64,000 nt of DNA from Phaeosaccion multiseriatum (Eukaryota; Protista; Ochrophyta, other classes): the NCBI GenBank assembly GCA_965112735.1, contig OZ218955.1, positions 310,001-374,000 on the forward strand, written 5' to 3'. Numbering within the stretch: the stretch's first letter is position 1; each line of letters opens with the position of its first letter. Under the pieces are notes generated by a model that worked only from the letters and a program-made list of their open reading frames with translations, did no database searches and was not told where the DNA came from. The position numbers and the translations under genes were made by a program. Of this stretch, positions 25,301 through 61,912 are shown one piece after another.

Positions 25301-28300
25301 CGTATGAGTGTGTGGGGCCGCCCTGCTGGCCCTCCCCTGGGTTTGTCGAGTGGGGCCATTTCGGACGATCAGATCACGGCTTCGAGTAAGAGGGTATCCG
25401 GACCCCCCAAGTGTGCTAGGCTGGGGGGGTGGGGGGCGTGGCAGCCCTCCAGGCACGACGCTCCTGACGGAGAGGGTTCCGAGCTGGTGTGTGGAGGTGG
25501 CGGAAGGGGCAGAGGGGGCGGTGGCGAAATCACCTTCAAACTCAAGGCCACGAGTGTCTTGTCCGGGATATCCACGCAAGGGATTGACGCAGCGGCGGAG
25601 GAGGAGGAAGAAGAAGCCGCAGCCGATGAGGTGAGGCGTTGTGGCGTTGTGGCGCCAATCACCGCAGTCGGCGATGCTTTGTCGCGGAGCTCCTCCTCCA
25701 CCGCTGGGGAAGGGGCAAAGACCCATACAAAGGTCAAGGCAGATGGCAGTGGATGGGGGTGGACGGAGGCGTATCAAGTGGACTACAGCATGGACGGGGA
25801 GAGGTGGACTACGGCAGCCCCTCTTCGGCTAGAAGTAGATGAGGACGAGCAGCAGCAGGCAGCGAAGGGAGGAGGAGGAGGAAGAGGAGGAGGAGGAGGA
25901 GGAGGAGGAGGAGGAGGAGGGGGTGGGAAAGGAGACGGGGAGCAGCGAGTGTTCCCAGGCAATGTGGACGGCGTAGGAGTGGTGACGAATCTGTTGCAAG
26001 AGCCCGTGCGGTGTCGTTTTGTGCGTGTCCGGCCGCTGGCGTGGCGCCATAGGCTGTCGCTAAGGGCCGAGCTCCACGGGATGGGTTTGGAGGATGCATC
26101 GGGGATGGAGAGTGGTAAAGTGGCGGACAGCCAGTTAACCTGCTCGAGCTCGGAGGGAGGAGGAGGAGGAGGAGGAGGAGGAGGAGGGGATGGAGGGAGG
26201 AGTGCCGCTCACTTTGGTCGGCTGAACTCGACGGAAGGCAGCGGGGCTTGGGTTGCGGGGGTACCCAATCAGGACCAGTGGCTCCAGATCGACTTCAAGA
26301 GTCGCCAGATTGTGACGGGCATCAGCACGCAAGGGAGGGCGCCACAGGGGGGGGGAGAAGGAGGCGAAGGAAGTAAGGGGGGCGGGGGCGACGCCTTTGT
26401 CACGTCGTTTTCTCTCATGTTTAGCTCAGATGGCCTCAGCTGGAGCCCGCTGCTGACGGAAGGAGGGCTTTCCAACGGGGGCGGCGACGCTGGGGGAGGA
26501 GCGGTCAAGGTAAGGGAGGGATTAAGGGAGGGAGGGAGGGAGGGAGGGAGGGAGGGAGGGAGGGAGGGAGGGGTTTACGTGCTGTGTGCGTCTATGTGTG
26601 TCTATTCGCCTCCATTCTTTCCCCTTTTCTTTCCTTCCTTCACCCGCCACTCGTCTCCCCTGTCAAACTCAAACTCAAACTCACAGGTGTTCAAGGGAAA
26701 CGCGGACAACACGAGTATTGTGAGCCACGTGCTACCCCGCCCTCTCTTCTGCTCCTTCCTTCGCCTGTGCCCCATGACCTGGCACGGGGCCATCGCCCTC
26801 CGATGCGAGGTATACGTGTCTGTGAGCTGCCATCTGCCTTCGTCCTGGTCGTCTTCGGAGCAGATGCAGGATGACGAAGCCGCTTTCGAGGGGTGCCCGG
26901 CCGAGGGGCTGTGTGGGACTGTGTTGATGGAGAGCAGCGCCGAGGCGGTGGGAGAAGGGGGTGGAGTGGGAGAAGGAGTAGGAGTGGAAGCAGGAGGAGG
27001 AGGAGGAGTGGGACGACGACTGGGAATGGGACTGGGGGGCGGAGGAGGAGGAGGAGGAGGAGGGGGTGGGGGAGGAATGGCAGGGAACGACAGGGGGGGT
27101 GGCTTGGGTGGCGCCAGCGTTGGTAGGGTTGGCGGCGGAGGGGGTCATTCGCAGCTGCAGCAGTTGGTGATTCAACCGCCCTCGGACAGCGAAGACGACG
27201 TCGAGGCGCGCCTCCTGCCCATCGTTCGCGGCCTCGGCCCGGCCGCATGCAATGAAGTAAGGGCAGTGTCGTCGCCATCTGTTGTCTCATCAGCGGCCTC
27301 TGGAGAGCAAGGCGGACGAGCATCGGTAGCAGCTGCACCAGGAGGAGCAGCAGCAGCAGCAGCAGCAGCAGGAGGAGGAGGAGGAGGAGGAGGAGGAGCA
27401 GTTGGTGATGCAACAGCTGGCCAGCCGCCCAAGCCCAAGAAGCAGACGGAGGTGGAGGAGGAGGCGGTGGCCGCTGTACCGGGCATGATGGTGGTCATCA
27501 CCTCCCCTCCCTCTGCGCAGGCCCAAGCTGCCCAGGCCTCCCTTACCAAGGCCCTCTACGGCCGAGCGGGCCGCCTGCTGAGGGTGCTGTTGCCCTCAGA
27601 GGAGCAGGCACCAGGGGACTCAGTGGTGGAGGGGGGAGGAAGGGGGGGGGGGGTCATGTGCCCCGGTAGCTTTGCCTCTGGTGTATCACCAACTGCCGAT
27701 GCTTCTTCTCGCTCATCCTTTTCGCCTTCGTCTACGGACAACGCGAGCGGTGCGGCTACATCACCAACTGCTGCTGCTGCTGCTGCTGCTGTATCACCAA
27801 CTGCTGCTGTCACTGGTGGTGCTTCGTCCTCGCGGCCAGGCCAGGATCATAGTAATGACGGCGGAAGCGCTTTGGTGGAGCTGCTGGACCTCGAGACGGG
27901 CCTGCCCCGACACCTGGTACTGCCCCTGAGCTGTCTTCGAGCCCCCTCCCGTATGTTCGGACAGGCTCTGACGGGGGTGGAGCAGGCGGAGGGCTTTGTG
28001 AGGAACATGTCGAGCGCTTTGGCTGTGCATCACGCGAGGAGGGCCACGCTGGCGCTGCTGGACGCCGCTACGAGTGAGAGTGAGAGTTCGCCCTCAGCAG
28101 TTGGTGGTACAGCGGTCACAGGCTCAGGCTCAGACTCAGGCTCGGTTGGAGCTGCTGCTGGAGCCGCTGCCGCAGGGCTTCCCACCGCTGCTAGTGTTTT
28201 AGTTACACGTATACAGCAGCCGATTCGTCTCTCGCTGGAGCAGCTGGGGGGCGCCCAGAGGCTCGTGGCGCTGGTGAAGTTTGTAGCGGCGTCCACACAG

Positions 28301-31300
28301 GGCGGGCTGCAGATGGGGGAGGTAGAGGCTGCTTCTGGTCACGCAGCGAGAGGGGGGGCAGGAGGAGCGATAGGGCCGGTGGAAGGATCGGGAGGAGGAG
28401 GAGGGGGAGGAGGAGGAGGGGAAGGATGGCAGTGGATGGATGGAGGTTTCCGAGAGGAGGAAGTGATGCAGCTCGTGCGCAAGTTGCTGCACAGCTTTTT
28501 GGACATGGAGAGGAGGGATGCGTCACCATCTTCATCTGCGATATCACCAACTGCCGCGGGAGAGGCAGGAGGATGGCAGGCCGGACGTGAAGCTTGTGCT
28601 GCTGTATCACCAACTGCTGGTGAAGTGGGACTGGGGCGAGGGGGCTTGAGTGGGAGTAGGAGTGTGGGTGTGGGTGTGGGTGCGTGTGCGTCACTGTCGC
28701 TGAGCCGAGTACTTGTCGATGAGACGGTGCGGCACTTCGTTCGCTCCACCAAGCCCGCTGACTCGAGGCAGATGCAGGTAAGGAGGGTGTAGGGGATTAG
28801 GCAGACGCCACGTATTAGGAGGGCGGGGGTTGACACCAGGTTTATATGGTAGAGGTAGGCACGTGCGTGCGTGCGTGCGTGCGTGAGCATGGCAGACGGG
28901 TCAGGCTTTGTTTGACCCTCTCTCGCTTTGCAGCCCATGTCTTTTTTCTCTTGTCCTACTTGTATGCTTCACTGGGGTTGCTATCATCCGCCTCCCTGAC
29001 TGTTTGACTGTTTGAATGTTTGACTGACTGACTGACTGACTGACTGGCTGACCGACTGACTGTAATGAATGACTGACTGACTGACTGATTGATTGATTGA
29101 TTGATAGATTGATGGACTAATGGACTGATTGGCTGACTATCTTCGCGCCCCCTCCCCACCTCTCTACCCCCCTCCCCTCTCCCCTCTGTGAGCAGGTGCG
29201 AGAGTCACTCCACCCGTACTTCCCCGTGTGTGAGTATCAAGGAGAGGTGGTCTTCAAAGGATGCACGGCCCTCCGAGTACACTTCGACCCCAGGTGTCGC
29301 ACACACGCCCTCTCGGTCCTGACACTCGCCATGGATCCGCTCTTCTTGAGGGTGGCGGGGCGCTTTTCAGGCGGACCCGGTTCCTTCAGGCCTCTCCTCA
29401 TTCACGGGAATCGCTTCTTCTTCAAGTTTTCCAGCAGGTGAGTCGATGAATGAATGTGTCAAGATAGGGGAGGGGGTACCGAAGTGTCTGACTGGCGTTT
29501 CAAGGAGAGGCCTCTCGCTCTCGCCCTCGCTCTCTCTCCTTCTCGCTCGGTCTCTCCCTCCTCTTATGTGTGTTTGTGTGTATGCGTGTGCCGATCAATG
29601 ATTTGTTGACACTTCAATGGGGTGGTATCTTGGCCTGTCAAGGCCTGGCCTGAGCGCTTCCTCTCCCCCCCCCCTCCTCTTCTTTCCCGATGGATGGCAC
29701 CCTACTGCAAGCAGGCTCCCCTCCCTGGCAGGGCAGCTCTCTGCCTGTTCGCACGGGTGGGGCTATCGCTTTAGTGTGGTGCCTCTCTTGGGCCTGCAGT
29801 GGACGCACGAGCGACAGGTGAGTGAGTGAGTGAAGGAGTCAGTGAGTACGTGACTGAGTGAGCGAGGCCGTGAAGTGCCTTCGTTCCTCGGGCTTTGCTC
29901 TGGCCTTATTTTTGTTGCTTTGTACGTACGTTCCCACTCTCTTCTCCATCCCTTCGTTTGATTCCCTCCGTCCCTCCGTCCGTCCCTCCGTCCCTCCGTC
30001 CGTCCCTCCGTCCGTCCCTCCGTCCGTCCCTCCGTCCGTCCGTCCCTCCGTCCCTCCGTCCGTCCCTCCGTCCGTCCGTCCCTCCGTCCCTCCGTCCGTC
30101 CGTCCCTCCGTCCCTCCGTCCCTCCGTCCCTCCGTCCCTCCGTCCCTCCGTCCCGCCCTCCGTCCCTCCGTCCCTCCGTTCCGCCCTCCGTCCCTCCGTC
30201 CCTCCCTCCGTCCCTCCGTCCGTCCCTCCCTCCCTCCCTCCCTCCCTCCCTCCCTCCCTTCCTCCCTCCCTCCCTCCCTCCCTCCCTCCCTCCCTCCCTC
30301 CCTCCCTCCCTCCCTCCCTCCCTCCCTCCCTCCCTCCCTCCCTCCCTCCCTCCCTCCCTCCCTCCCTCCCTCCCTCCCTCCCTCCCTCCCTCCCTCCCTC
30401 CCTCCCTCCCTCCCTCTCTCCCTCCCTCCCTCCCTCTCTCCCTCCCTCCCTCCCTCCCTCCCTCACTCCCTCCCTCCCTCCCTCCCTACCTACCTCCCTA
30501 CCTCCCTCCCTCCCTACCTACCTACCTACCTCCCTCCCTCTCTCCCTCCCTCCCTCCGTCCCTCCCTCCCTCCCTCCCTCCGTCCCTCCCAAAAGGTTCT
30601 GCAAGACGCCAGTCTGGAATGGGCATGTTTCCTCCTCGACTTCCTCTTGGACCTTCACACAGCGCAGGCCCTCCCCCGGGGGGCTGTGCACAACGGGACC
30701 GTGTTTGCGGCCCTTGTGCGCTACCTCCGCTCGGGGGGTGTGCCTTACAAGGAGAGAGTTGTTGACCTCCTCACGCGGCTGCTGCGGCACACACACCTCT
30801 TCAGCGAGACCGATCCGCCGGACTTGGGTGCGTGGGCGCGCGCGTGTGAGGGTCTTTGGCGTGGGCGTGTGCGTGTGCGTGTGCGTGCGTGGTGCACACA
30901 TTGCTGTTGGGGGTTGGTGTTGTGGTGGCGGGGTCTGGGGTGGGGCTTTTGTTTCAAATCAGGTGTTTTGTCGTGTGTGTTTCCACATACCCCCTGTCTT
31001 CCTGACACCCCCTGTCTGCGCACCCTCTCCAGGCAAGTTGTCGGGGATCATATCCCTTGTGGCAGAGCGCTGTGCTGTCCGCAGCTCCGCCCTTAGAGAG
31101 AGAAGGAGGATGGCAACCAATGGCACGGGCAGCGCCGGCGGCGGCGGGGGGGGGGTGTCAGGACAGGGGGGCGACCACCCCGGTGGCCATCGTCAGGACA
31201 GTCAGGACTCAGACAACTTCAGCGACTGGGTCAATCAGAGGATCTTCGGGACCCCCAGAGTATTAGCAGGACGAGGAGGAGGAGGAGGAGGGGGGGGCGA

Positions 31301-34300
31301 GGGGTCGACAGGAGGTGGAGGAGCAGGGGCGGGGGCGGGGGCAGGTGGAGCAGGGGCAGGAGGGGTAGGGGCGTGCCACGTGTCTTCGCGGCTGCAAGCT
31401 CTTGTGGAGCTCAGCGTGGCCGCTCAGATCGCGCAAGAGACAGAGACAGACACACACAGAGAGCGACGAGCTCTTGGAGAAGATGGACGGCAGCAAAGTA
31501 TGCCGCTGTCGAGACCGGACCATGACAACGTGCCGCCATTGTCACTGCAGCTGCCGGCCTTTTCCCACGGAGACGAGCTTGCGTCCGCCCAGGGAGAGGG
31601 AGGCGAGCTTGACGCGGAGCCTCTGGCGACGGCGGCTGCGCTGCGGTCGGTGCTGGAGGTGGCTGACGCGATTCACCACCGTCGCCCTCTGCCTGACGCC
31701 CTTGTGTGTCAGGCCTACGTGGACGGGGTTGGTGTGCATGAGGAGGTGGATACGTCACAGTTGGCGCTGGAGGGGTTAGTGCTTCAGCAGCAGCAGCAGC
31801 AGCAGCAAGGGGAGAAGTCTGAGGAGGCCGCTCCTGTGGGGGTCGAGGGGGTGGAGAAGGGCTCGAGCAAGACCTGCCGTGATGAAACCGACGGTATTGC
31901 ATGTGGCAAGGCCAAGGTCAAGGGCAAGGTCCGGGTGCGCAAGGCGATGGGCGATGGGATCACGCAGTATGTCAGTGGGAGAGGCGAGGTGGTGTTTCCC
32001 GGGGCTGCCGCACTGCTTGTGCGCCTGGTTCTCTGTGGAGGACAAGGTGACGATGATGACGAGGAGGATGATGAGGGTGGGGAGGGTGGAGCAGCAGCCC
32101 GTTTCGAGGACAAGGATTTACCCACATTCGTGAGCAAGGGTGCGAGGCTGGTGATTGATGCGACTGGCGGTGAGACGGAGGAGGAGGAGGAGGAGGAGGA
32201 GGAGGAGGAGGAGGAGGAGGAGAAGGGGGAGGAGGAGGTGGAGGTGGAAGGGGAGGATGGGAGCATAGACAGCAACCCAGGGTGTGAAGAGCGCAAGGAG
32301 AACGACCCCGGGGTGGAAGAGAGCAAGGAGAACGACCCAGGGGTGGAGGAGAGCAAGGGGGCGGGGAAGCAGGAGGAGACCGAGGGTCGTTCAGAAGCGC
32401 TACTCGACGAGGGGCAAGGGCAGCAGCAGCAGTTGGTGATACAGCACGGCTCGGTGGGACCGCCGCGGCCGATGGAGGCGGAGGCCGTCGTTCCATCGGC
32501 CGTCGAAGGTGTTGTAAGCGACACGGCGGCACCGTTGCCTGCACCACCAGCAGGCGGTGATACAGCAGCAGAGGCTGAGTCAGGAGGGGAAGAGGTGACC
32601 AGCAGCCCTATCGAAAAGAGCACGCACCACCAGCAGTCCACAGATGGCAGTAATGTGATTGAGGTGCATGAGGACGAGGAGGAGAAGAAGGAGAAGAAGA
32701 AGAAGAAGAAGAAGAAGAAGAAGGAGGAGGAGGAGGAGGAGGGGAAGGAGGAGGAGGAGGAGGAGGAGGAGGAGGAGGAGGAGGAGGCGGAGGAGGAGGA
32801 GGAGGAGGAGGAGGAGGAGGAGGAGGAGAAGGAGGAGGAGGAGGAGGAGGAGGAGGAGGAGGAGGAGGAGGAGGAGGAGGAGGAGGAGGCGATACAACAT
32901 GCCGCCCCGCAGCTGACGATTCGTGTATCCGACGACCCCTCCCTCGATTTGCGCCAGGGCCAGTCACCATATGCTGCGCAGGGTCAGTCGGTTCCATCTG
33001 GATGGGGGGGGGGGGAGGAGGAAAACAGAGTGCCGCCTCCCCCCCCCGGGACTGCCTCTCCCCCGGGGGGGGTGCAGCAGCCGGAGTCTCCTCCGCCGCT
33101 GATTCGCTTGCCCCCCTCCTCTCTTGCGAAGGCTCCACCGAAGAGCACTGCCCCCCGGGGTGTCGTCCCCTCCGAAGAGAAGGTTCAGCAGATGGCAGAC
33201 TTGGGTAAGTCAACGATGGAGAGGGGGGGTGGGTACATTAGGCATCGTCCAAATGATGGGTCGGCTTCGGGTGGGTGGTGCTTTGGCTTCTGCTCACGCA
33301 TCTAGAGGGGATGCTTCCTCCTTTCCGATGACTATTCTTCCCTCCTTGACTGACTGACTGATTGACTGATTGACAGGTATGGATGCGGAGTGGTGTCGAG
33401 CCGCTCTACGCCGCTGTGGAGACGACTCAGACAGAGCCACGGGATATCTCTTCGACCATGAGGCGGAAATGCAGGGGATGGTGGAGGAGGACTCGGCTTT
33501 GGCATTGGCGGAGGCAGAGGAGAGGGCCCGCCTAGCAGCACCAGTTAGTGAGGCGGTTGTAGGATGGGGTGACACAGCAGGTGTGGACGATGCAGCAGCA
33601 AGGGCATTAGGAGGAGGAGGAGGGGGAGGAGGAGGCGGAGGAGGAGGAGGAGGAGGAGGAGGAGGAGGAGGAGGAGGAGGAGGAGGAGGAGGAGGAGGAG
33701 GGGGAGGAGGAGGAGGCGGAGCAGCAGCAGGAGGAGAAGGACAAGAAGGAGAAGGAGAAGAGCAAGAGGGTCAGGAGGTACCAGCACCTCTCGTGGTGGA
33801 CGGCGCTGCCCCTGAGACGGAGCAGGGGCAGGGGATAGCAGTGGATAGCAGCGACCAAGACGAGAGTCCCTACGGATGGGGCTCCTCCCTACCGGACATG
33901 TGGGGGGCGGCAGCTCACGGGGATGGGGAGGTGGATGGAGATAGGGGGTATATAGGGGGTGGAAATGGCAATGGCTGGTCGCAGCACGGGAGGCAGAGCA
34001 GCCTTGAGGTCGACTACGGCGAGGGAGACGAGGGCAGGTTAGTGTGAGTTTCAGTGTCGGGCTCGGGGAGAGTTGAGTTTCAGGACAAAGTGTTGTGCCT
34101 GTCTTTCGCCGCCTTAGCTGCAGCTGTGAGTCCCACTGGGCGGATGAGGTACATGCTACTCACGCTCCGTCCGTCCGTTCCGCAATGACTAACTTCACAC
34201 ACCGCCGCCCGCCCCATGCACCCTTTGCCCCTCCGCCATCCACTGCCATCCCCCCTACCCAGCACGGACGAGTGCCCGTCCCTCGTCAATGAAGACGGCG

Positions 34301-37300
34301 ACAGCCCCCTACACGGCAGCAATTGCGACTTTCACGGCAGCAGCTCCGCCCCGGCTCCGAACGGGGCGCTCACCTTGCCCTTCCCTACAGATGCCGCCGA
34401 CCGTACCACCAACGCGGCTGGTGTGGGGCAGGGGCAAGGGCAGGTCAATGAGGTTGGCGACGATGCGGATGACAACCTTGCGGAGGTCGACCCTTCCGCC
34501 CTTTCACAGATGACGGCGATGGGGTTGGATGTGGAGTGGGCCCGGGCGAGTCTGCGTCGATGTGCGAATGAGGTGGCGGCGGCGGTGGAGTTTTGCTTCA
34601 GCAACGACATGGCGGCTCTTGTTATGATGGACGCCAGGACAGAGGCAAGGAGGATAGAGAGGCGCGAGCATCAGCAGCAGCAGCAGCAGCCGCCGCTGAG
34701 TGAAGTGCTTGGAGTGACTCCACCAGTTGGTGATACAGCAGGGGCACGAGGAGCCCCGGAGGTTGGGGAGGCGCAGCAGCAGCAGCAGCAGCAGGAAGAG
34801 GAGGAGGAGAAGAAGAACGAGGGTTTCCGAGTGGAGGAGGAACGCGTGCTGTCTTCCGAGGAGCAGCGTAGGCGGGCATGGGCGGAGGCGGTGAGCTCCG
34901 TGACGACGGCAACTAGGCTGCAGGAGGGACTCATGCTGGCGTTACGGGTGGTTGGGGAGATGCCAGCGGATAGAGAGAAGGGCAGAGGAGGAGGAGGAGG
35001 AGGAGGAGGAGGAGGAGGAGGAGGAGGAGGAGTGGGTCCTATTCTACGTGCGGCGAACACCATCGGTACAGTGCCTTCGCTGGACGCGCACTGCCTGTTT
35101 GAGCTTGTAAGGCCCCCTGCCAGCACCCTCTCCAGGCTCTTGCAGCAACAACAAGACGCTGGCGGGCAAGTGAGCGCTAGCTGCGCACGCCGTCTGTCCC
35201 GGGGGTGCGTTTTCGTCCTCCAGGCTGCGTCTTGCAGGGCCTTCCTCGCGGTTACGGCGGACGGAGCTCTGGGCCTGGGTACAGACCTTTCCGAGGGCAC
35301 TCCCCTGCTACTCACGCTACTCCCGGATATCCAGACAAGGACGACTAATAGGAGGGTGCGAGCGTCGAGGCGGTTGGTGCTTCAGACTTGGAACGGGAGG
35401 AAAGTGCTGAGGCTCACGGAGGATGGGGAAGGGTTCCGATTCGAGGCCATGCCCCAGATGCCCCAGATGGCAGTGGAGGGAGGAGGGATGGCAGTGGATG
35501 GAAACAGCGTCCTGGAGGTGATGGTCATGGCTGAGCGACCCACGGTGGAGGCCAATGTGGAGTGGGAGTCCCACTTCGTCACATTCGCCTCCCCTGGGCG
35601 GGCCCTCGGAATGGGCAGTGGGGCCATTGGCGACGACCAGCTTCTGGCCAGATCGGCGGCGGTATCACCAACGGGTGAGGCTGAGGGTGGAGTACCCCAT
35701 GTGCCTGGTGCTGCGCCTGTGGTGCCTGCCTTGCTTGGCCCCTACGTGCGCGGGCGGATATCAGAGACGGCTACCGCAGCGGCCTCCTCCTCCCATGAAT
35801 CAAGGGCGGCAGGAGCAGGACCGGCTGGAGGAGGAGGAGGGGGGGCAGGGGCGACGCCGTCCGAGGAGCCGAGCGGGTGGGTTGCAGGAGAGAGCAACGC
35901 AGAGCAGTGGCTACAAGTGGACTTGCTCACGCCGACCAAGCTCACGGGGTTGGCGCTACAGGGAGGTGGGGAGGGCGCAGGCATGGTGCAGCAGTTCAAC
36001 ATCCGTGTCAGTGAGGACGGCCGCCGCTGGGCAGTCGTAGGGCAGCAGGAGCAGGAGGAGGGGCAAGGGCAGCACGGAGGAGAAGGAGATAGGGAAGGAG
36101 GAGGAGGAGGAGGAGGAGGAGGAGGAGGAGGAGGAGGAGGAGGAGGAGGAGGAGGAGGAGGAGGAGGAGGAGGAGGAGGAGGAGGAGGAGAAAGAGGAGG
36201 AGGTCGTTCGACTCTTCCTCTCTTGCCCGGCAACTACGACCCCAGGCAGGTGACGATGTATGTCTTCACGGGACCTTCGGGCAACGGAATCGTCGCCAGG
36301 TTTGTGCGCATATGCCCAACTCGCTGGCCGGGGAGTGGGCAGCAGGGCTCTTCTTCCACCGGAGCTGAAGGAGGAGAAGCCGTAGACAGGCTCGCCAACA
36401 AGGCCAAGGGCTTGTGTCTGCGCCTAGAGCTGTTCGGACCGGAGGTTTACGAGTTTTCCGGAGAGGAATTGGCTGCTGTGACTGGAGCTGGGGCTGTATC
36501 ACCAACTGCTGCCCTAATGGTTAGCGGCGGAAGTGCTGCCCAGAAAGGTGCCCTCTTGGCCAAGCAGCGTGCGGTGCTGCAGCAATGGCGACGGCGGCAG
36601 ATTCGCATTGAGGGGGATACCCTGCGCTTCTCCTTCGTTGCCCCGATGCTGCTCCGGACAGATCAAGAGAAAGGGGGGGATCAGGAGAAGGAAAGGGAAA
36701 GGGAGGAGGAGGGAGAGGAGGCCTCGACGCCGCAGCTACCGAAGGGTTTCAGGCTTTGTGTGACTGCGGTGGGCACGCCCGCCTCTGAGACGCTTCAGTG
36801 GCTGCAGGGGCGGAGGAGGGAGGTGGAGGAGGTGGGAAGGGTGATGCGAGACTGGCCCAAGCAGGCGGATGAAGAGCTTATGGAGTGGGCAAGCGCGCCG
36901 GGCAGGAGGGGGATGAGCGGGATGGCAAGAAGGGTGGGGTTGGGGAAGGGGGGGGGCATGACCAAGAGGGAGAAGGGCAAGCTGCAGGTGAGAGAGTGTT
37001 TGGGGGGGGGGGGGAGGACGCAGATAGGGAGAGAGATAAGAGTGAGGGCCCTCTGTATTTGTGTTCGCGTGTCTTTGCCACGCCTTTCCCTCACTCTTAC
37101 CCTCATCATTCCCAGCTAAGCCCCCCCCCCCCCCCCCCTACATATACCTTACCCCGCCCCTGCCCCCACCTCCCTCGCAGGTGCTCGCCTCCGTGCAACC
37201 CCCCGTGCTGCGTGCCATCCGCTACGCCCTCTTGCGTCACTTCGACGCCCAGCTCCGCACGGTCGTTCCCTTTGTCGACCTCCAGACACGCTCCCCCTGG

Positions 37301-47973: not shown

Positions 47974-50432
47974 ATGGTGCTTCCCTCTCGCCGAGGCATT
48001 CTCATGCCGCTTCTCGTTAGCTACGGGTGCTGCAGCTGCCTCTTGATCGTAGCTCAAGCATTTATCTCTTCCTGGGCCTTACAGAGTGAACATGCAGGAA
48101 GCACTATGGCTTCGCCTCTTCGAGGGGAAGCTGCTACTGAAGGAGCAACAGAGACTCCATCATTGGCGACCGGGCCGTCCCTCCTGGATGCCATACTAGC
48201 AAAAGCTCCTCAAGGTCTGCTCTACTCTGCTCTCTCCTTCCGCTCTCGCTGTAGCCTAAGGAGGGGTAGATTGCCTTCCCTTCGGTTTGTTGGGGAGCTC
48301 CCTCGGCACTATGCAGCCCTTCTCTCCACGCCTTCTCCACCGACTTACAGCCATCCATGTTATACGTATGCCGTTTGCCCACTCTCTTCAGTGACCCTCT
48401 GGGCGGACACGGCCCTCGTGGAAGAAGTAGGGCCCGACATTGCTCGGCTCGGTGGCGTTACCACCAATCCCAGCCTCGTGTATGCATGGGCCCAGCATCG
48501 CGCGGAGCAGCAGAACGGCCGCGAGAGCAGTAGCAGTAGTAGTGGTAATAGTAGTAGCAGCAGCAGTAGTGCTCGGGCGCTGGTCCAGGCAGCGTCTGTG
48601 GAGGCCGCCCTCTCGGCTCTGCGTCTCCTGCCCCCCCACGGTAGGGTGTGCACACAGGTGAGTGATTGGTGCATGAGTGCGTGAGGAAGTGAGTGTGTGA
48701 GAGAGAGAGACTGCGTGAGTGAGGGAGTGAGTGATTGAGTGAGCGAGTGAGGGAGTGAGTGAATTGAGTCAGTGAGTGAGTAAATGAGTGAGCGAGTGCG
48801 TGAGTGGGTGGGTGAGTGAGTGAGTGAGTGAGTGAGTGAGTGAGTCAGTGAGTGAGTGCATGAGTGAGGGAGTGCATGAGTGAGTGAGTGAGTGAGTCAG
48901 TGAGTGAGTGCATGAGTGAGGGAGTGCGTGAGTGCGTGAGTGAGTGAGGGAGTGTACGCACTCAACTCCTTCCCCCCAAGGAAATACAAAATGTCACGGA
49001 GATACGCAGCCACCTATGTGGCCGTCTCTTGACATCAACGACCCTACCCAGCTCGCCCCCCTCGTTGCCTCGCTCCGCTCTGCTACTCTGTATTACCAAC
49101 TGCTCAGGTGGACCCCCGCCATAGCGACGACGAGGAAGGCATGCTCAGGGATGCTCACGAGATCCTCGACAGGTGAAGACAGAGAACAGAACAGAATAAG
49201 ATGATATGATGTGCTTGTATCCTAAAGTATTTCTCATGAAACATGATTTAGGGCCTCATTGCTCACTTCCAAAGAAATTACCACACCAAGCAACCACCCA
49301 CACATCTACCAACCACCCATTCACCCAACCCACCAACGAACCAACCAACCAACCGACCAACCAACCAACCAACCAAACGTAGGTATTCCCAGGGGGGTGC
49401 GGACATGAGCCGAGTGTTGCTGAAGCTTCCTTCCTCCTGGGCAGGCCTGCAGGTCACAAGGAAGCTCGAGAAGGAGGGGGTCGCGGTGCTCGTTACCTTG
49501 GTGTGTGAGCCCTCACTGGGAGAGGGAGAGGGAGAGGGAGGGAGGGAGGGAGGGAGGGAGGGAGGGAGGGAGGGAGGGAAGGAGGGAGGGAGGAGGGGAG
49601 AGGGAGAAGTTTAGGGGCAGATAGAGGGAGAGGCGGAGGGGGAGGGAGAGGGAGAGGGAGACGTCTGGAGCCTTCGACTATGGTAGATACTTGCGTGTCT
49701 TCGTGTCAGCTGCCCCACTCTCTATCTCTGTCTGACATGCTCTCTCTTCTCTCTCTCTCTCTCTCAAACACTCTCCGTCTCTCTCTACATACATCATTGG
49801 GAAAAAACAGTTTTTCCCCAATGCATACAATTATATCATCACTCTCTTATATCTTTGTCCCTCTCTCTTACTTATGCTTAGGTATGCTCGGAGGTGCAAG
49901 CCCGAGCAGCCGTCGAGGCGGGCGCGACCATCATGGCCACATACGTCGGTCGAGTTGCAGACTGGCACAAGCAGCAGCAATTGGTGGTACAGGAACAGCT
50001 ACAGACGGAGCCAGATGGCGATGGCCAGCCCTCCCCCCCCCCGGGAGGGGCTGCGCTGGACGACCCCGGGGTGCGGCTCACAGTGGCTGCCCACGAGCTC
50101 TGTCGGACGGCGCAGAGCACCCGGGAGCACGACAACGACAACGACAACGACAAGAGGACGGAGGTGATGGGGGCTTCCTTCCGAAGTGTTGGACAGGTGC
50201 GGAGTGTTTCGATCTCTTGGTGATTTGATTTCGATGCTCGATAATCTACCTTGATCGAGGTCAACTGAAACTGAAACTGAAACTGTGAGCAGGTGCAGGC
50301 GTTGGTGGAGGCGGGGTGCGCTCACGTGACCGTGTCGCCTCAAGTGCTGCAGATGCTCAGGGACACGCCCTCGCCTTGGACTGAGCCTTCAAAGAGTGGC
50401 ACCGACCCCACCACCATCACCACCATCACCAG

Positions 50433-50463
<31 letters not shown>

Positions 50464-50688
50464 AGCAGCAGCAACGGCAACAACAACAGTGGGAGTAGTG
50501 GTGTCGAGGTAGATGTAGAGGGTGGTGTTATTGGCTCCCCCTCCCCTCCAGCCTTAACGGAGGTGTCCTTGGAGCAGCTGCTGGCGGCGGACGAGTGCGG
50601 GGCCTCAGTGAGCGGTGCAAGCCTCAACGGCTTCGCCACTCACGCCCAGGAGCTCGAGGACCTGCTGTCCTCCCTCCAAGGAGTGTGA
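47974..50688 (+). CDS. Transaldolase/fructose-6-phosphate aldolase family protein, predicted plastid-targeted (~466 aa)
   Basis: Exons 47974-48214, 48392-48657, 49108-49172, 49383-49500, 49882-50196, 50293-50688 (1401 nt). Motifs WADTA, TTNPSL, GRVCTQVDP, VLLKLPSSWAG (Schiff-base Lys at 49423), ATYVGRV, MGASFR and a TalB-like C-terminal helix. Signal peptide ends in AQA-FI. Alternative start at 48004. Confidence 0.88.
48658..48953 (+). repeat. (GAGT)n intronic microsatellite starting at the donor site
   Basis: gtgagtgattggtgcatgagt...gagtgagtgagt in intron 2 of the transaldolase-like gene. Confidence 0.9.
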
Positions 50689-57559: not shown

Positions 57560-57773
57560 ATGTCGGTACGTAAAGCAGCATGGCGTTGATGCAATTGATC
57601 ATCTCCTGCTGCCTTTGCTGCAGTGGTCGTGCCCTCGGTACAGTGTTCGCTGGAGAGAAGGGCGGCGTCAGTGTTGGCTTTTGCGAAAGGAGGAGGGCCT
57701 AATGGAAACCATGCTCCTTTCCTTCGCCTATGCCTCCTTCATATTCACTTCGTCTGTCTCGATGTCCTAATCT

Positions 57774-57813
<40 letters not shown>

Positions 57814-59084
57814 ATCTTTCTATCTATCTCTTCCCCTCCGTTTCCCTCTGTATACCTCCTCTCCCTCTCTCTCTCTCTCTCTCCCCTCCTCCCCCCCCTT
57901 TCTCTCTCGCGGCAGGATGACAGCGACGACTTTAGTCATGGCGAATTTGAAGACAGCGGCTTCGACGACAGCCAGGGGGCGGAAGTGGGGGGGGGCGCCA
58001 ATGGGGGTGGGAAGAAGAAGGAGCGCCAGCTTGAGAACGATAAGTACGACATGGCCATGGACGTTAGCGCCAGTATGGATGGCAGCGATGGAGGGGGGGG
58101 GGGAGGGGGGGGCACCAAGGTCAACTCACGCAAGGAGCAAATGGTGAAGAATAACAAGTTTGACGAGGCGTTGGATGTGTCTGCGAGCATGGACATTAAT
58201 AGTAGAGTCGACGGAGAGGGCAAGCACGGGGGTGGAAGCGGGGGAGGCGAGAGGAAGGACGGGGAGGAGGTGAAGGATGATCAGTTTGATGCGGCGTACG
58301 ACTTGTCGAGTGGAGGGGACGACGAGTCGAGCGTAGAGACGAGAGACGAGCGAGAAGCCCCCAAGAAGAGGACTGTGGGCGGGGGCTCGAGCGAGAGCGC
58401 GGGTGGTGGGGGGGGTGGGGGGGGGTCCGGGGGGGTAGCACCTACTGCAGACTCAGCACTACATTCGTCAGGCAATGCGCTGGCTTCCTCTGGAGCGGGG
58501 GGTGGAGGAGGGGGGAACGGGGCACACCGAGCGGGGGGGAAGGGAGGGGCTGGAGGGGAGGGAATGGGCAAGGGGGATGGTGGCGGCGGCGGCGGGGCGG
58601 GGAGTGACTCCGAGTCGGGTAGTGATGACGGAGAGTCCTCGAGTGACGGAGAGGAGCAGGAGGGGAACGCCTCGGTCAAGGTCGAGGGGGCCTACAACCC
58701 GAAGGACTATGTGCACTTGGCCGTGGGGGACGAAATTAGGGACTTGTTTCAGTACATTGAGCGTTACAAGCCACACGAGGTCGAGCTGGAGACAGCGGTG
58801 CGACCCTTCATTCCCGACTACATCCCGGCAGTTGGTGATATGGATGCTTTCCTCAAGGTCAGTTGGGGGAGAGAGAGGGGGGGGTGGTGGGTGGTGGAGA
58901 AAGGGTGGACGGCAGTGGATGGGGAGGTTGACTTGAGGGTGAGGAGGAGGGGTGGGTGAGTGGGTGGGGTGGGGGGGGTGGGGTAGAGGAGGGGAGGATG
59001 GCAGTAGACGGGGAGGTGGGTGTCAGGACACACGAATAGGCAGGGACCTTTTGTGTTTTGTGTGCTTACGCGTGGTTTTGTATC

Positions 59085-60164: not shown

Positions 60165-60769
60165 GGGGGAGGGCAACATATGACCACAGAGGCATTCGAT
60201 GTCGGTACAGTATCGTGATTGGTGAGAGATGAACGAATAGAAACTGGAACTGAAACCTTCGGCGGTGGCTGGCTGGTTCTCTGGTCATGGCCCTTTCCAA
60301 GAGACCGACCGCGGCAGCCCTCCTTACAGTAGACATCGGGCTTGAGGCCCTCTCGCCGTGCGCGCTCAGAGTAGGCGCAACCCTCTTCTATTATTGCTCC
60401 TCCCCGTATCTTGGAGCATGCCTCAACCTGTCACCTCCTCCATTGGAATAGCAGGACCTTTGCTGCTGCAGCTGCTCCTGCTCATGGAGAGTAGAGTCAG
60501 TACACCGTTCAGCAGCGGTGCTTTACTGCGGGTCCCCTTCTGTTTGGAGAAGAAGGAGAAAAAGAAGAATAGCGTCCAGTTGTGAGTTTCGCGGAGGACC
60601 AACACATGCATCCACATCATCCTATAAGTCAATTAAATCTCATCACGCCCTAGATCATAGATCATAGAGAGAGAGAGAAAGACGTCGTCCCCTCCTATCT
60701 CTCTGGATATAAACTAGCGAAGCTCGCGTGTTAGTTCTCCCGGAGTCACATACCTTCCCTTCCCTTTAT

Positions 60770-61912
60770 ATGTATGGGTTATCCCTGTCCATCGACACAG
60801 ACTTGAGGCACAAAATTGAGGAGGGAAGGGTTGTTGGGCATGAGGATGGCAAATCCAAGGAAGTGGTCGCTGGGCATGAGTATGGAAGAACCCCTTCCGC
60901 GGGATCTGAACAAGATAGTGATGCTGAACATGGTGAGGAAGGAGGGCCTACGGTATTCAATGGAGGCGTGAACCAGGCGCTGTTTGCAGTTTGCCACGAG
61001 GCCTTGACGAAACCCGAGCTGCTCCGTGTCGTGTTGGAGTACGTGGGTGGCGGGGACTTCCTCTTTGTGGCTGCTACGAGTAAGGAGTGGGGGGTCCAGT
61101 ATGGCCATTTGTACCCAGGCTTAAAAAAGACAAATTGTTCTTCGGTGGTCAGCTCTGTTGAGTGCGTGAGATGGGCGACGAGTCAGGGCCTCGAGCTATG
61201 TGTGGAGGTCTTTAGGGCCGCTGCTAGGCACGGAGATGTCAAAGTGTGTAAGGCCCTCCACGGCGCAAAGTGTCCATGGGATGAAAGCGTGTGTCGTGGA
61301 ACGACAGAGAATGAGAAGCATGGCTTACGTGTCCTCCGCTGGCTGCGATCCGAACATCTCCCCAAGAAGGAGAGGTGCCCAGGGATAGAAGAAATGTGTG
61401 GATGGGCTGGATATATGGGGAGGCTGGACATCGTCAAGTGGCTGCTTTCAGAAGAGGGGAATCCTTGTCCTCCGATCGATAGCCTCAGTTGGCAATACGC
61501 CTGTGCAGGCGGAAGCGTCGAGGTCGTTGAGTATCTGCTCAATCATGCTCCCACGAGAGCGTTGCTGGAGGAGAATGAAGATAGGCGCTGGCGACATGGG
61601 GCTGGGTGCGCTGCTGTAAATGGTCACATTGGGGTGCTGCAGCTCCTCCACGCCAATGCCCGCCACCTCTGCGATTGGGACGCGTGGGTCTGTAGGAATG
61701 CAGTCATGAGGGCAAGGAGTCTCGCAACGCTCAAGTGGCTCCGATCGGAGGAAGTGCTCTGTGGGTGGGACGAAAAGTCGTGCCCACAGGTCATCAGGGA
61801 CCAGCGGCTGTACACCCTGCACTTTGCAGAGTGGCATATCGATCCCCAAACCTTTGAGGAGATTAAGCAGTGGGTACACACCAATGGACATCCCTGCCAC
61901 TGCCAAGACTGA
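60770..61912 (+). CDS. Ankyrin-like repeat protein with an F-box-like N-terminal segment
   Basis: Uninterrupted ORF. LRVVLEYVGGGDFLFVAATSKEW is followed by repeats AARHGDVKVCKALHGAKCPWDE, AGYMGRLDIVKWL, ACAGGSVEVVEYL and AAVNGHIGVLQLL...CDWD. The start is uncertain: there is an ATG at 60770 and an acceptor-like acacag at 60800. Confidence 0.8.
   Translation: MYGLSLSIDTDLRHKIEEGRVVGHEDGKSKEVVAGHEYGRTPSAGSEQDSDAEHGEEGGPTVFNGGVNQALFAVCHEALTKPELLRVVLEYVGGGDFLFVAATSKEWGVQYGHLYPGLKKTNCSSVVSSVECVRWATSQGLELCVEVFRAAARHGDVKVCKALHGAKCPWDESVCRGTTENEKHGLRVLRWLRSEHLPKKERCPGIEEMCGWAGYMGRLDIVKWLLSEEGNPCPPIDSLSWQYACAGGSVEVVEYLLNHAPTRALLEENEDRRWRHGAGCAAVNGHIGVLQLLHANARHLCDWDAWVCRNAVMRARSLATLKWLRSEEVLCGWDEKSCPQVIRDQRLYTLHFAEWHIDPQTFEEIKQWVHTNGHPCHCQD

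What the first reader, a model, noticed from the sequence alone, without database searches (positions are those of the whole stretch)
47974..50688. Plastid-targeted TalB-type protein with the full active-site signature of fructose-6-phosphate aldolase (FSA)
Seen: a long TalB-like scaffold (DT, TTNPS, Schiff-base Lys, GASFR, C-terminal helix), but with GRVCTQV (Gln, 48655), EGVAVLVTL (Leu, 49489) and IMATYVGR (Ala and Tyr, 49936-49944). Established: E. coli TalB has Glu96, Asn154, Ser176 and Phe178 at these positions, whereas E. coli FSA has Gln59, Leu107, Ala129 and Tyr131. The F178Y and E96Q/F178Y variants convert TalB into an F6P aldolase. Characterised FSAs are short bacterial enzymes. Inference: a natural eukaryotic aldolase on the TalB scaffold, cleaving F6P (or a related ketose) to dihydroxyacetone plus GAP in the plastid (AQA-FI bipartite signal). 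This would imply an unrecognised plastid carbon route and a possible biocatalyst.
Basis: partly seen in the sequence, partly recalled or inferred. Interest (0 to 1): 0.76.

Follow-up and report, generated by a model that had tools for sequence, protein, structure and literature searches.

The report
Algal transaldolase-fold enzyme with aldolase active site
This alga's gene encodes a protein built like ordinary transaldolase but carrying the catalytic residues of bacterial fructose-6-phosphate aldolase; it belongs to a small unrecognised family in stramenopile algae and probably splits sugar phosphates instead of shuffling them, though no activity has been measured.

Summary
A 5- or 6-exon gene (47974-50688, +, all GT-AG) encodes a TalB-type transaldolase-fold protein. 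The Schiff-base Lys, Asp17, Asn35, Thr156 and the phosphate site are kept. TalB Glu96, Asn154, Ser176 and Phe178 are Gln, Leu, Ala and Tyr, as in E. coli FSA.

It is not a one-off. Seven other proteins carry the same signature, plus Pro177Thr: Ectocarpus (2), Tribonema (2), Heterosigma and two environmental sequences. All 226 other full-length TalB-type hits are canonical. The eight form one clade (bootstrap/SH-aLRT 100/99) even with the signature columns removed.

Five have hydrophobic signal peptides. Three, including the window, have Phe right after the predicted cleavage site, which is the ochrophyte plastid motif.

Some cyanobacteria independently have TalB-type Gln/Tyr proteins. In three genomes the next gene is glycerol dehydrogenase, the same pairing as E. 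coli fsaB-gldA.

Aldolase activity, the true substrate and plastid location remain inferred. No RNA evidence was obtained. No paper found describes this family, and databases call its members transaldolase. Verdict: new variant of a known kind, worth a bench test.

The parts
47974..48060 (+). Start codon and predicted signal peptide (29 aa, ending AQA); Phe codon follows at 48061-48063
   Evidence: Sequence read. Mean Kyte-Doolittle hydropathy over 15 aa is 2.27, against 0.71 for TalB. No dedicated predictor was available. GC3 of exon 1a is only 0.475, so the N-terminus is the least secure part of the model.
48061..48214 (+). Ser/Thr/Ala-rich transit-peptide-like stretch, then the start of the mature N-terminal helix (rest of exon 1a)
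   Evidence: The helix motif aligns with the N-terminal helix of the homologues.
48215..48391 (+). Probable extra in-frame intron (177 nt, GT..AG, 67% pyrimidine)
   Evidence: GC3 is 0.52, like the other introns. It encodes 59 aa with no counterpart in any homologue. Not confirmed by RNA.
48392..48657 (+). Exon 1b: catalytic Asp (48406-08), TTNPS Asn (48466-68), poly-Ser insert, and Gln replacing TalB Glu96 (48655-57)
49108..49172 (+). Exon 2 (helix after the Gln strand)
   Evidence: GT-AG borders and spacing identical to P0002
49383..49500 (+). Exon 3: Schiff-base Lys (49423-25), Leu replacing Asn154 (49489-91), Thr156 equivalent (49495-97)
   Evidence: Pfam TAL_FSA 29.6 bits on this exon's ORF; alignments
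49882..50196 (+). Exon 4: Ala-Thr-Tyr replacing Ser176-Pro177-Phe178 (49936-44), Arg181 equivalent (49951-53), low-complexity inserts, Ser/Arg phosphate site in MGASFR (50176-84)
   Evidence: Pfam 37.6 bits. PDB best hits are TalB F178Y variants. The motif pattern matches once in the window and 0 times in shuffles.
50293..50688 (+). Exon 5: last barrel strands, a long Ser/Asn-rich insert, the C-terminal helix typical of TalB-type enzymes, stop codon 50686-88
48658..49107 (+). Intron 1, mostly a (GTGA)n-type microsatellite
   Evidence: Contigs of the DNA runs break here.

Best explanation
The gene encodes a member of a small, conserved subfamily of class-1 (TalB-type) transaldolase-fold enzymes found in ochrophyte (stramenopile) algae.

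The protein keeps the Schiff-base lysine, the Asp/Asn/Thr that position the ketose, and the Arg/Ser/Arg phosphate site. The general acid-base Glu is replaced by Gln and the neighbouring Phe by Tyr. This gives the Gln-Thr-Tyr water-binding triad of fructose-6-phosphate aldolase.

Inferred mechanism:
1. The lysine forms the imine with a ketose phosphate.
2. The C3-C4 bond is cut and the aldose phosphate leaves.
3. Tyr and the bound water then protonate and hydrolyse the three-carbon enamine instead of holding it for a second acceptor.

The enzyme would therefore act as a lyase (F6P, or a related ketose phosphate, to or from a DHA-type donor plus GAP or another aldose phosphate) and not as a transferase. 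The Asn-to-Leu and Ser-to-Ala changes make the donor pocket hydrophobic, as in FSA, so hydroxyacetone or glycolaldehyde may be as good a donor as DHA.

An N-terminal signal peptide followed by Phe suggests import into the complex plastid.

Shown here: the gene model by homology, the residue set, the clade, the fold of a relative, and the targeting motif.
Inferred: the activity, the substrate and the location.
For: - Residue mapping to TalB and FsaA.
- All eight subfamily sequences have Q/L/A/T/Y at TalB positions 96/154/176/177/178. All 226 other full-length TalB-type hits have E/N/S/P/F.
- The clade has 100/99 support with those five columns removed (quick trees).
- The window protein keeps 54 of 61 subfamily-invariant columns at only 33-47% overall identity. 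This indicates purifying selection on the core.
- An AF2 model of relative P0002 (pLDDT 89) matches TalB-type and human transaldolases best.
- Literature: TalB F178Y gains FSA-level aldolase activity (70-fold), and the donor preference is set by S176/A129 (PMC3962226). Swapping the water-organising residues between FSA and TalB interconverts the two activities, and Q59-T109-Y131 hold the catalytic water (PMC13259622).
- Convergence: cyanobacterial TalB-type proteins with Gln/Tyr arose separately. In L012, L013 and L014 they lie directly upstream of glycerol dehydrogenase (NF006941, 517-524 bits against a cut-off of 336). E. coli fsaB-gldA has the same arrangement (PMC6643234).
- Signal peptides are present in 5 of 5 members with complete N-termini, with Phe at +1 in the window, Ectocarpus and Heterosigma.
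Against: - No assay of any member exists.
- No transcript evidence was obtained: the RNA runs matched only a trinucleotide repeat.
- The window protein sits on a very long branch (2.7-2.9 changes per column). It is interrupted by low-complexity inserts and has unusual composition.
- Exon 1a, which carries the signal peptide, has non-coding-like GC3 of 0.475.
- Tribonema, Heterosigma and P0005 have 10 or fewer residues between the signal peptide and the mature domain. That is short for a stromal transit peptide.
- TalB F178Y and E96Q/F178Y variants were made in the laboratory on an Asn154/Ser176 background. The effect of adding Leu/Ala/Thr on this scaffold is unknown.
- It is not known whether the genome has a separate canonical transaldolase.
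Confidence: 0.6

Rival explanations
1. It is still a transferase: a transaldolase with an altered acid-base pair and a hydrophobic donor pocket. It might work on an unusual donor or acceptor, for example a deoxy- or sulfo-ketose, as bacterial 6-deoxy-6-sulfofructose transaldolase does.
For: The scaffold, the Schiff-base Lys, Asp17, Asn35, Thr156 and the phosphate (or sulfonate) site are all conserved. Transaldolase-family enzymes with non-classical substrates exist (PMC7491151). Plastids make sulfoquinovose lipids (general knowledge).
Against: Every characterised transferase of the family cited here keeps Glu and Phe. The Gln/Tyr pair is the feature that converts TalB to an aldolase (PMC3962226, PMC13259622). 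The independent cyanobacterial Gln/Tyr genes pair with glycerol dehydrogenase, which needs free DHA.
Confidence: 0.2
2. It is an FSA-like aldolase, but F6P is not its physiological substrate. It might condense hydroxyacetone or glycolaldehyde with aldose phosphates (carbonyl scavenging, or deoxy-sugar phosphates), or make or cleave sedoheptulose-7-P or arabinose-5-P.
For: The donor pocket is Leu/Ala as in FSA, which prefers hydroxyacetone. Ser at this position is what favours DHA (PMC3962226; PMC13259622). The physiological role of E. coli FsaA is itself unknown (PMC6643234).
Against: Nothing speaks directly against it; this refines the main reading. The cyanobacterial analogues that pair with glycerol dehydrogenase keep Asn/Ser, so their context says less about a Leu/Ala pocket.
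Confidence: 0.3
3. The protein is not stromal. The signal peptide takes it into the ER, the periplastidial space or the secretory route.
For: Three of the five complete family members have almost no transit-peptide-like region. P0005 and Tribonema lack Phe at the likeliest cleavage site. The window's putative transit region carries four Glu.
Against: Phe follows the predicted cleavage site in the window, Ectocarpus and Heterosigma. The Ectocarpus extension is long, Ser/Thr/Arg-rich and basic, the classical ochrophyte pattern. A sugar-phosphate enzyme has no obvious substrate in the ER lumen (inference).
Confidence: 0.3
4. This copy is a decaying or non-expressed gene, and the conserved residues are a remnant.
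For: Very long branch, many low-complexity inserts, no RNA support.
Against: The reading frame is intact across five or six exons with canonical splice sites. All 12 catalytic and binding positions are intact, and 54 of 61 subfamily-invariant columns are kept. GC3 of exons 1b-5 is 0.68-0.81, against about 0.5 in the introns.
Confidence: 0.07

Closest known systems
E. coli transaldolase B / human TALDO1 (transaldolase subfamily I, EC 2.2.1.2)
   Same: Same long (beta/alpha)8 scaffold with the C-terminal helix. Same Schiff-base Lys, Asp17, Asn35, Thr156 and Arg181/Ser226/Arg228. Best structural matches for the modelled relative.
   Different: Glu96 to Gln, Asn154 to Leu, Ser176 to Ala, Pro177 to Thr, Phe178 to Tyr. 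Further subfamily-specific changes: Gly19Ala, Ser205Leu, Val206Thr, Lys294Val, Gly298Ser; Arg300 is not conserved. Relatives score 196-221 bits against a cut-off of 396 for NCBIfam talAB. N-terminal signal peptide; eukaryotic introns.
E. coli fructose-6-phosphate aldolase FsaA/FsaB (transaldolase subfamily V)
   Same: Same catalytic residue set: Asp6, Asn28, Gln59, Lys85, Leu107, Thr109, Ala129, Tyr131, Arg134, Ser166.
   Different: FSA is a 220-aa chain of the short type. The algal proteins are 340-470 aa TalB-type and branch with subfamily I, not V. They score 71-90 bits against a cut-off of 246 for NCBIfam fsa_talC_mipB. FSA has Pro130 and Lys168 where the algal clade has Thr and Arg.
Engineered TalB F178Y, E96Q/F178Y and E96Q/F178Y/R300E (PDB 3cwn, 4rz6, 9qpk)
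   Same: TalB scaffold carrying Tyr (and Gln) at the same positions. These are the best PDB sequence hits of exon 4. Ectocarpus even has Glu at the Arg300 position.
   Different: The laboratory variants keep Asn154, Ser176 and Pro177. The algal clade is natural and adds Leu/Ala/Thr.
Cyanobacterial EF-hand transaldolases with natural Gln96/Tyr178 (Aphanothece hegewaldii, Chroococcus sp. FPU101, two MAGs; found here)
   Same: Natural TalB-type proteins with the Gln/Tyr pair.
   Different: Independent origin inside the canonical cyanobacterial clade. They keep Asn154/Ser176/Pro177, have a C-terminal EF-hand, pass the NCBIfam 'transaldolase' cut-off and sit next to glycerol dehydrogenase.

Membership tests
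Transaldolase subfamily I (TalB/TALDO1 type) | Long (beta/alpha)8 barrel with C-terminal helix; colinear with TalB over its whole length | tested here: met
   The window model aligns with TalB residues 10-312. The AF2 model of relative P0002 matches 3te9, 1f05 and 1onr at E 1e-27 to 1e-25. The window's own joined protein was not folded.
Transaldolase subfamily I (TalB/TALDO1 type) | Schiff-base Lys132 with Asp17, Asn35 and Thr156 | tested here: met
Transaldolase subfamily I (TalB/TALDO1 type) | Catalytic Glu96 and Phe178, invariant in 226/226 canonical full-length hits | tested here: not met
   Gln and Tyr
Transaldolase subfamily I (TalB/TALDO1 type) | Donor C1-OH binders Asn154 and Ser176 | tested here: not met
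   Leu and Ala
Transaldolase subfamily I (TalB/TALDO1 type) | Score above the curated cut-off of NCBIfam TIGR00874 talAB | tested here: not met
   Relatives P0002 and P0010 score 196 and 221 bits against 396. The window was tested only exon by exon with Pfam.
Transaldolase subfamily I (TalB/TALDO1 type) | Transfer of a DHA unit from F6P/S7P to E4P/GAP | not testable with these tools
   Needs an enzyme assay
Fructose-6-phosphate aldolase (subfamily V, FsaA/FsaB) | Gln59-Thr109-Tyr131 water triad with Lys85, Asp6 and Asn28 | tested here: met
   The role of the triad is from PMC13259622.
Fructose-6-phosphate aldolase (subfamily V, FsaA/FsaB) | Hydrophobic donor pocket Leu107/Ala129 | tested here: met
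Fructose-6-phosphate aldolase (subfamily V, FsaA/FsaB) | Short (~220 aa) chain of the decameric small-Tal/FSA type; descent from subfamily IV/V | tested here: not met
   466-525 aa TalB-type. Short-type chains match at only E~1e-13. In the tree the clade sits beside subfamily I sequences.
Fructose-6-phosphate aldolase (subfamily V, FsaA/FsaB) | Score above the curated cut-off of NCBIfam TIGR00875 | tested here: not met
   71-90 bits against 246 for P0002 and P0010
Fructose-6-phosphate aldolase (subfamily V, FsaA/FsaB) | Acceptor-independent F6P cleavage / DHA + GAP addition | not testable with these tools
   Needs an enzyme assay
Ochrophyte nucleus-encoded plastid proteins (bipartite presequence) | ER signal peptide with Phe (or Trp/Tyr/Leu) at +1 of the cleavage site | tested here: met
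   By inspection and hydropathy only: AQA then F in the window, ATG then F in Ectocarpus, VDA then F in Heterosigma. No SignalP or ASAFind was available.
Ochrophyte nucleus-encoded plastid proteins (bipartite presequence) | Transit-peptide-like region, and import shown experimentally | tested here: inconclusive
   About 40-50 aa in the window and Ectocarpus, 10 aa or fewer in Tribonema, Heterosigma and P0005. Import is not testable here.

The most novel reading that the evidence does not exclude
Ochrophyte algae carry a natural, plastid-directed F6P-type (DHA- or hydroxyacetone-dependent) aldolase that evolved from a classical TalB-type transaldolase by the same Glu-to-Gln and Phe-to-Tyr switch that enzymologists made in the laboratory. 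Cyanobacteria made the same switch independently and coupled it to glycerol dehydrogenase. This would be a recurrent natural route from transferase to lyase. It would open an unphosphorylated-triose branch (F6P to or from DHA + GAP) in photosynthetic carbon metabolism.
Probability: 0.4. Interest if true: 0.8.

Novelty: new variant of a known kind. Interest (0 to 1): 0.68.

Why it matters
- **Enzymology.** According to the papers read here, F6P aldolase activity has been demonstrated only for the short subfamily-V enzymes of E. coli (PMC7092467), and their physiological role is still unclear. A natural FSA-type active site on the TalB scaffold would show that the laboratory conversion (F178Y, E96Q/F178Y) mirrors an evolutionary path taken at least twice. 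Phylogeny does not settle whether the Simkania protein is a third, separate case.
- **Biocatalysis.** It would provide new, differently shaped DHA/hydroxyacetone aldolases.
- **Algal physiology.** It would point to a route between hexose phosphates and free dihydroxyacetone or glycerol in algae and cyanobacteria.
- **Annotation.** These proteins are currently labelled 'transaldolase', so pentose-phosphate and Calvin-cycle reconstructions of brown algae, xanthophytes and raphidophytes may count an enzyme that does something else.

Tried and rejected
1. The word-based protein search with the Tal part of exon 1 found nothing. Relatives were found only by the exhaustive phmmer search with exon 4.
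2. RNA evidence: the two RNA-type runs matched only the AGT-repeat at 48526-48570. The DNA runs of 'organism B' cover the exons but say nothing about splicing.
3. My first PDB search with exon 3 was one base out of frame and returned nothing.
4. The top hit of the profile search, P0127 (654 aa), is a tandem double canonical transaldolase and not a member.
5. The window is not Heterosigma: GC is 0.598 against 0.479 at the Heterosigma locus.
6. Descent of the algal clade from the cyanobacterial Gln/Tyr proteins is rejected. Those nest inside canonical cyanobacterial EF-hand transaldolases. Simkania's Gln/Ala/Tyr paralogue attaches next to the algal clade, but on a long branch with weak support (80), so no claim is made.
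7. Metagenome scans: the specific motif pattern gave 0 hits. A looser pattern gave 120 chance hits, none of the Tal family by hmmsearch. The same specific pattern gave 0 hits in 185,579 bacterial and archaeal species genomes.
8. The protein atlas returned only generic transaldolase clusters.
9. Neighbouring ORFs in the window gave no Pfam hits that bear on function.
10. Literature: no paper in the library links FSA with algae, plastids or cyanobacterial glycerol dehydrogenase. Schneider et al. 2008 (PMC2662071) is not held.
11. The scan's notebook has no note on transaldolase in this genome.
12. Joined step left out: the spliced protein was never sent to Pfam, NCBIfam, PDB, the big protein searches or the fold tools. 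Those were run exon by exon, by reference, or on database relatives. The joined model was built only inside local scripts from window.fa, for alignments and trees.
Full report
**What is there.** Between 47974 and 50688 on the + strand lies an intron-containing eukaryotic gene. Pfam TAL_FSA matches four ORF pieces in colinear order: profile positions 1-84, 108-141, 143-214 and 213-239. Reading the DNA and translating gives five exons, all bounded by GT..AG and in frame, for 525 aa:
- 47974-48657
- 49108-49172
- 49383-49500
- 49882-50196
- 50293-50688

The junctions are confirmed by homology. The Gln-to-Lys distance is 37 residues, exactly as in the closest relative P0002, and the exon 3/4 and 4/5 joins fall inside conserved motifs without gaps.

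Inside the first exon there is very probably one more in-frame intron (48215-48391, 177 nt, GT..AG).
- It is 67% pyrimidine and has GC3 0.52, like the four other introns. Exons 1b-5 have GC3 0.68-0.81.
- It encodes 59 residues that no homologue has.
- Its removal restores the homologues' spacing between the N-terminal helix and the first strand.

The product is then 466 aa. No transcript evidence could be obtained. The RNA-type runs matched only a trinucleotide repeat, and the DNA runs of the source organism simply cover the exons.

**The active site.** I took E. coli TalB and FsaA from the annotated K-12 record and aligned them with the model in a local script.

Kept:
- the Schiff-base Lys (TalB K132; codon 49423-25)
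- Asn35 (48466-68)
- Thr156 (49495-97)
- Arg181 (49951-53)
- Ser226/Arg228 (50176-84)
- Asp17 (48406-08)

Changed:

| TalB residue | Window residue | Codon | FsaA equivalent |
|---|---|---|---|
| Glu96 | Gln | 48655-57 | Q59 |
| Asn154 | Leu | 49489-91 | L107 |
| Ser176 | Ala | 49936-38 | A129 |
| Phe178 | Tyr | 49942-44 | Y131 |

A phmmer search of exon 4 against PDB ranks TalB variants carrying F178Y first (9qpk, 4rz6, 3cwn), with Tyr on Tyr.

**It is a family, not an oddity.**
- An exhaustive phmmer search with exon 4 against 1.84 billion cluster representatives found four relatives with the same motif. Two follow-up searches added named ones.
- The members are: Ectocarpus siliculosus 'transaldolase B' (P0010), E. 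fasciculatus (P0032), Tribonema minus (P0009), a near-identical transcript (P0002), Heterosigma akashiwo (P0001), and two environmental sequences (P0005, P0007).
- At TalB positions 17/35/96/132/154/156/176/177/178/181/226/228, all eight including the window read D-N-Q-K-L-T-A-T-Y-R-S-R where covered. All 226 other full-length TalB-type hits read D-N-E-K-N-T-S-P-F-R-S-R.
- Further subfamily-specific residues are shared by the window: Gly19Ala, Ser205Leu, Val206Thr, Lys294Val, Gly298Ser.
- With the five signature columns removed, the eight sequences are one side of a branch with ultrafast bootstrap/SH-aLRT 100/99. The window is sister to the Tribonema pair at 98/93 (quick trees).
- The window protein is very divergent: its end branch is 2.7-2.9 and its identity to the other members is 33-47%. 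It still keeps 54 of 61 columns that are invariant in the other members. This argues for selection on the core and against decay.
- All named members are ochrophytes (brown algae, xanthophytes, a raphidophyte). Other agents' notes on this genome also call it a stramenopile-type alga, and the window carries an IFT46 gene.

**Scaffold.**
- AlphaFold2 on P0002 with a 52-sequence alignment gave pLDDT 89.
- Foldseek against PDB puts class-1 transaldolases first (Francisella, human, mouse, E. coli TalB) at E 1e-27 to 1e-24. Short transaldolases of the FSA-like size class appear only at about 1e-13.
- By curated HMMs the algal proteins are members of neither equivalog. For talAB they score 196-221 bits against a cut-off of 396. 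For fsa_talC_mipB they score 71-90 bits against 246.

**Why the residue swap matters (established knowledge, from papers read here).**
- TalB F178Y gains 70-fold aldolase activity and reaches the efficiency of wild-type FSA.
- FSA prefers hydrophobic donors, while TalB F178Y prefers DHA. A129S in FSA raises DHA efficiency, and S176A in TalB F178Y raises hydroxyacetone activity (PMC3962226).
- Gln59, Thr109 and Tyr131 hold the catalytic water.
- The algal clade therefore has the lyase-type acid-base system and the FSA-type hydrophobic donor pocket, on a TalB body with an intact phosphate site.

**Independent support from bacteria.** A scan of one genome per bacterial and archaeal species for Tyr in the TalB-type motif found natural Gln96/Tyr178 proteins in four cyanobacteria: Aphanothece hegewaldii, Chroococcus sp. 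FPU101, a Synechococcales MAG and a Microcoleaceae MAG.
- They read D-N-Q-K-N-T-S-P-Y-R-S-R and have a C-terminal EF-hand.
- They nest inside the canonical cyanobacterial EF-hand transaldolases, so the switch happened separately there.
- In three of the four loci the next gene downstream, on the same strand, is glycerol dehydrogenase (NCBIfam NF006941, 517-524 bits against a cut-off of 336).
- That is the arrangement of E. coli fsaB-gldA, which is taken as the link between FsaB and DHA metabolism (PMC6643234).
- In Aphanothece the cluster continues with enolase and a D-2-hydroxyacid dehydrogenase. In Chroococcus, GAPDH lies upstream.
- This is context evidence that Gln/Tyr on a TalB scaffold goes with free DHA.
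- It bears on the algal clade only by analogy, because the cyanobacterial proteins keep Asn154/Ser176.
- A Simkania MAG has a canonical-looking transaldolase followed by a Gln/Asn/Ala/Pro/Tyr paralogue.

**Targeting.**
- All five members with a complete N-terminus begin with a strongly hydrophobic segment. The 15-aa mean hydropathy is 2.1-2.8, against 0.7 for TalB.
- The residue after the likeliest cleavage site is Phe in the window (AQA then F), in Ectocarpus and in Heterosigma. The full single-exon Heterosigma ORF was read from the genome locus. This is the ochrophyte plastid motif.
- The window and Ectocarpus then have a 40-50-aa Ser/Thr/Ala-rich stretch. Tribonema, Heterosigma and P0005 have 10 residues or fewer.
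- Plastid import is therefore plausible but unproven. An ER or periplastidial location remains a live rival.
- Exon 1a has GC3 of only 0.475, so the start of the gene model is its weakest part.

A natural FSA-type active site on the TalB scaffold is real, conserved and recurrent. The lyase activity, F6P as substrate, the plastid location and any new carbon route remain inferences.
- I found no paper that describes this family, and the databases call its members transaldolase or hypothetical protein.
- I class it as a new variant of a known kind.

Noticed in passing
L012:5-2378, L013:3123-5965, L014:474-5530, L018:3-2046: Four cyanobacteria have an EF-hand TalB-type 'transaldolase' with natural Gln96/Tyr178. 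In three of them glycerol dehydrogenase follows directly. In Aphanothece, enolase and a D-2-hydroxyacid dehydrogenase come next. In Chroococcus, GAPDH lies upstream. This looks like an F6P-aldolase/glycerol fermentation cluster, annotated simply as transaldolase.
   Followed up: partly
L017:3041-4878: A Simkania (Chlamydiota) MAG has two adjacent transaldolase genes. The second has Gln96, Ala176 and Tyr178 but keeps Asn154 and Pro177. It attaches next to the algal clade on a long, weakly supported branch.
   Followed up: partly
L003:4042-6006: P0127 is a 654-aa head-to-tail fusion of two canonical transaldolase domains on a eukaryote-like Logan contig.
   Followed up: no
P0009 versus P0002 (alignment A1 columns 332-368): The Tribonema minus genome annotation carries a 37-aa insert right after MGASFRSVD that the near-identical transcript lacks. 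It is probably an unspliced intron in the gene model.
   Followed up: no
TalB Arg300 column: Arg300, conserved in 63 of 75 non-subfamily rows of the tree alignment, is Asn, Ala, Lys or Glu in the algal clade. Ectocarpus has Glu, the same change as in the engineered TalB E96Q/F178Y/R300E of PDB 9qpk.
   Followed up: no
window 23969-28792 and 34216-37119 (+): Very long open frames with several F5/8 type C (discoidin) domains. They are part of a run of large + strand ORFs from about 4.3 to 37 kb that otherwise have no Pfam match.
   Followed up: no
window 57730-58959 and 60728-61912 (+): An IFT46 C-terminal domain (85.7 bits) and an ankyrin-repeat ORF. The organism therefore builds flagella by intraflagellar transport.
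   Followed up: no
window 48684-48945, 49320-49375, 49515-49660: The introns of the gene are largely microsatellites: GTGA-type, CCAA-type and GGGA/GGGAGA-type. Short-read contigs of the source organism break at each of them.
   Followed up: no
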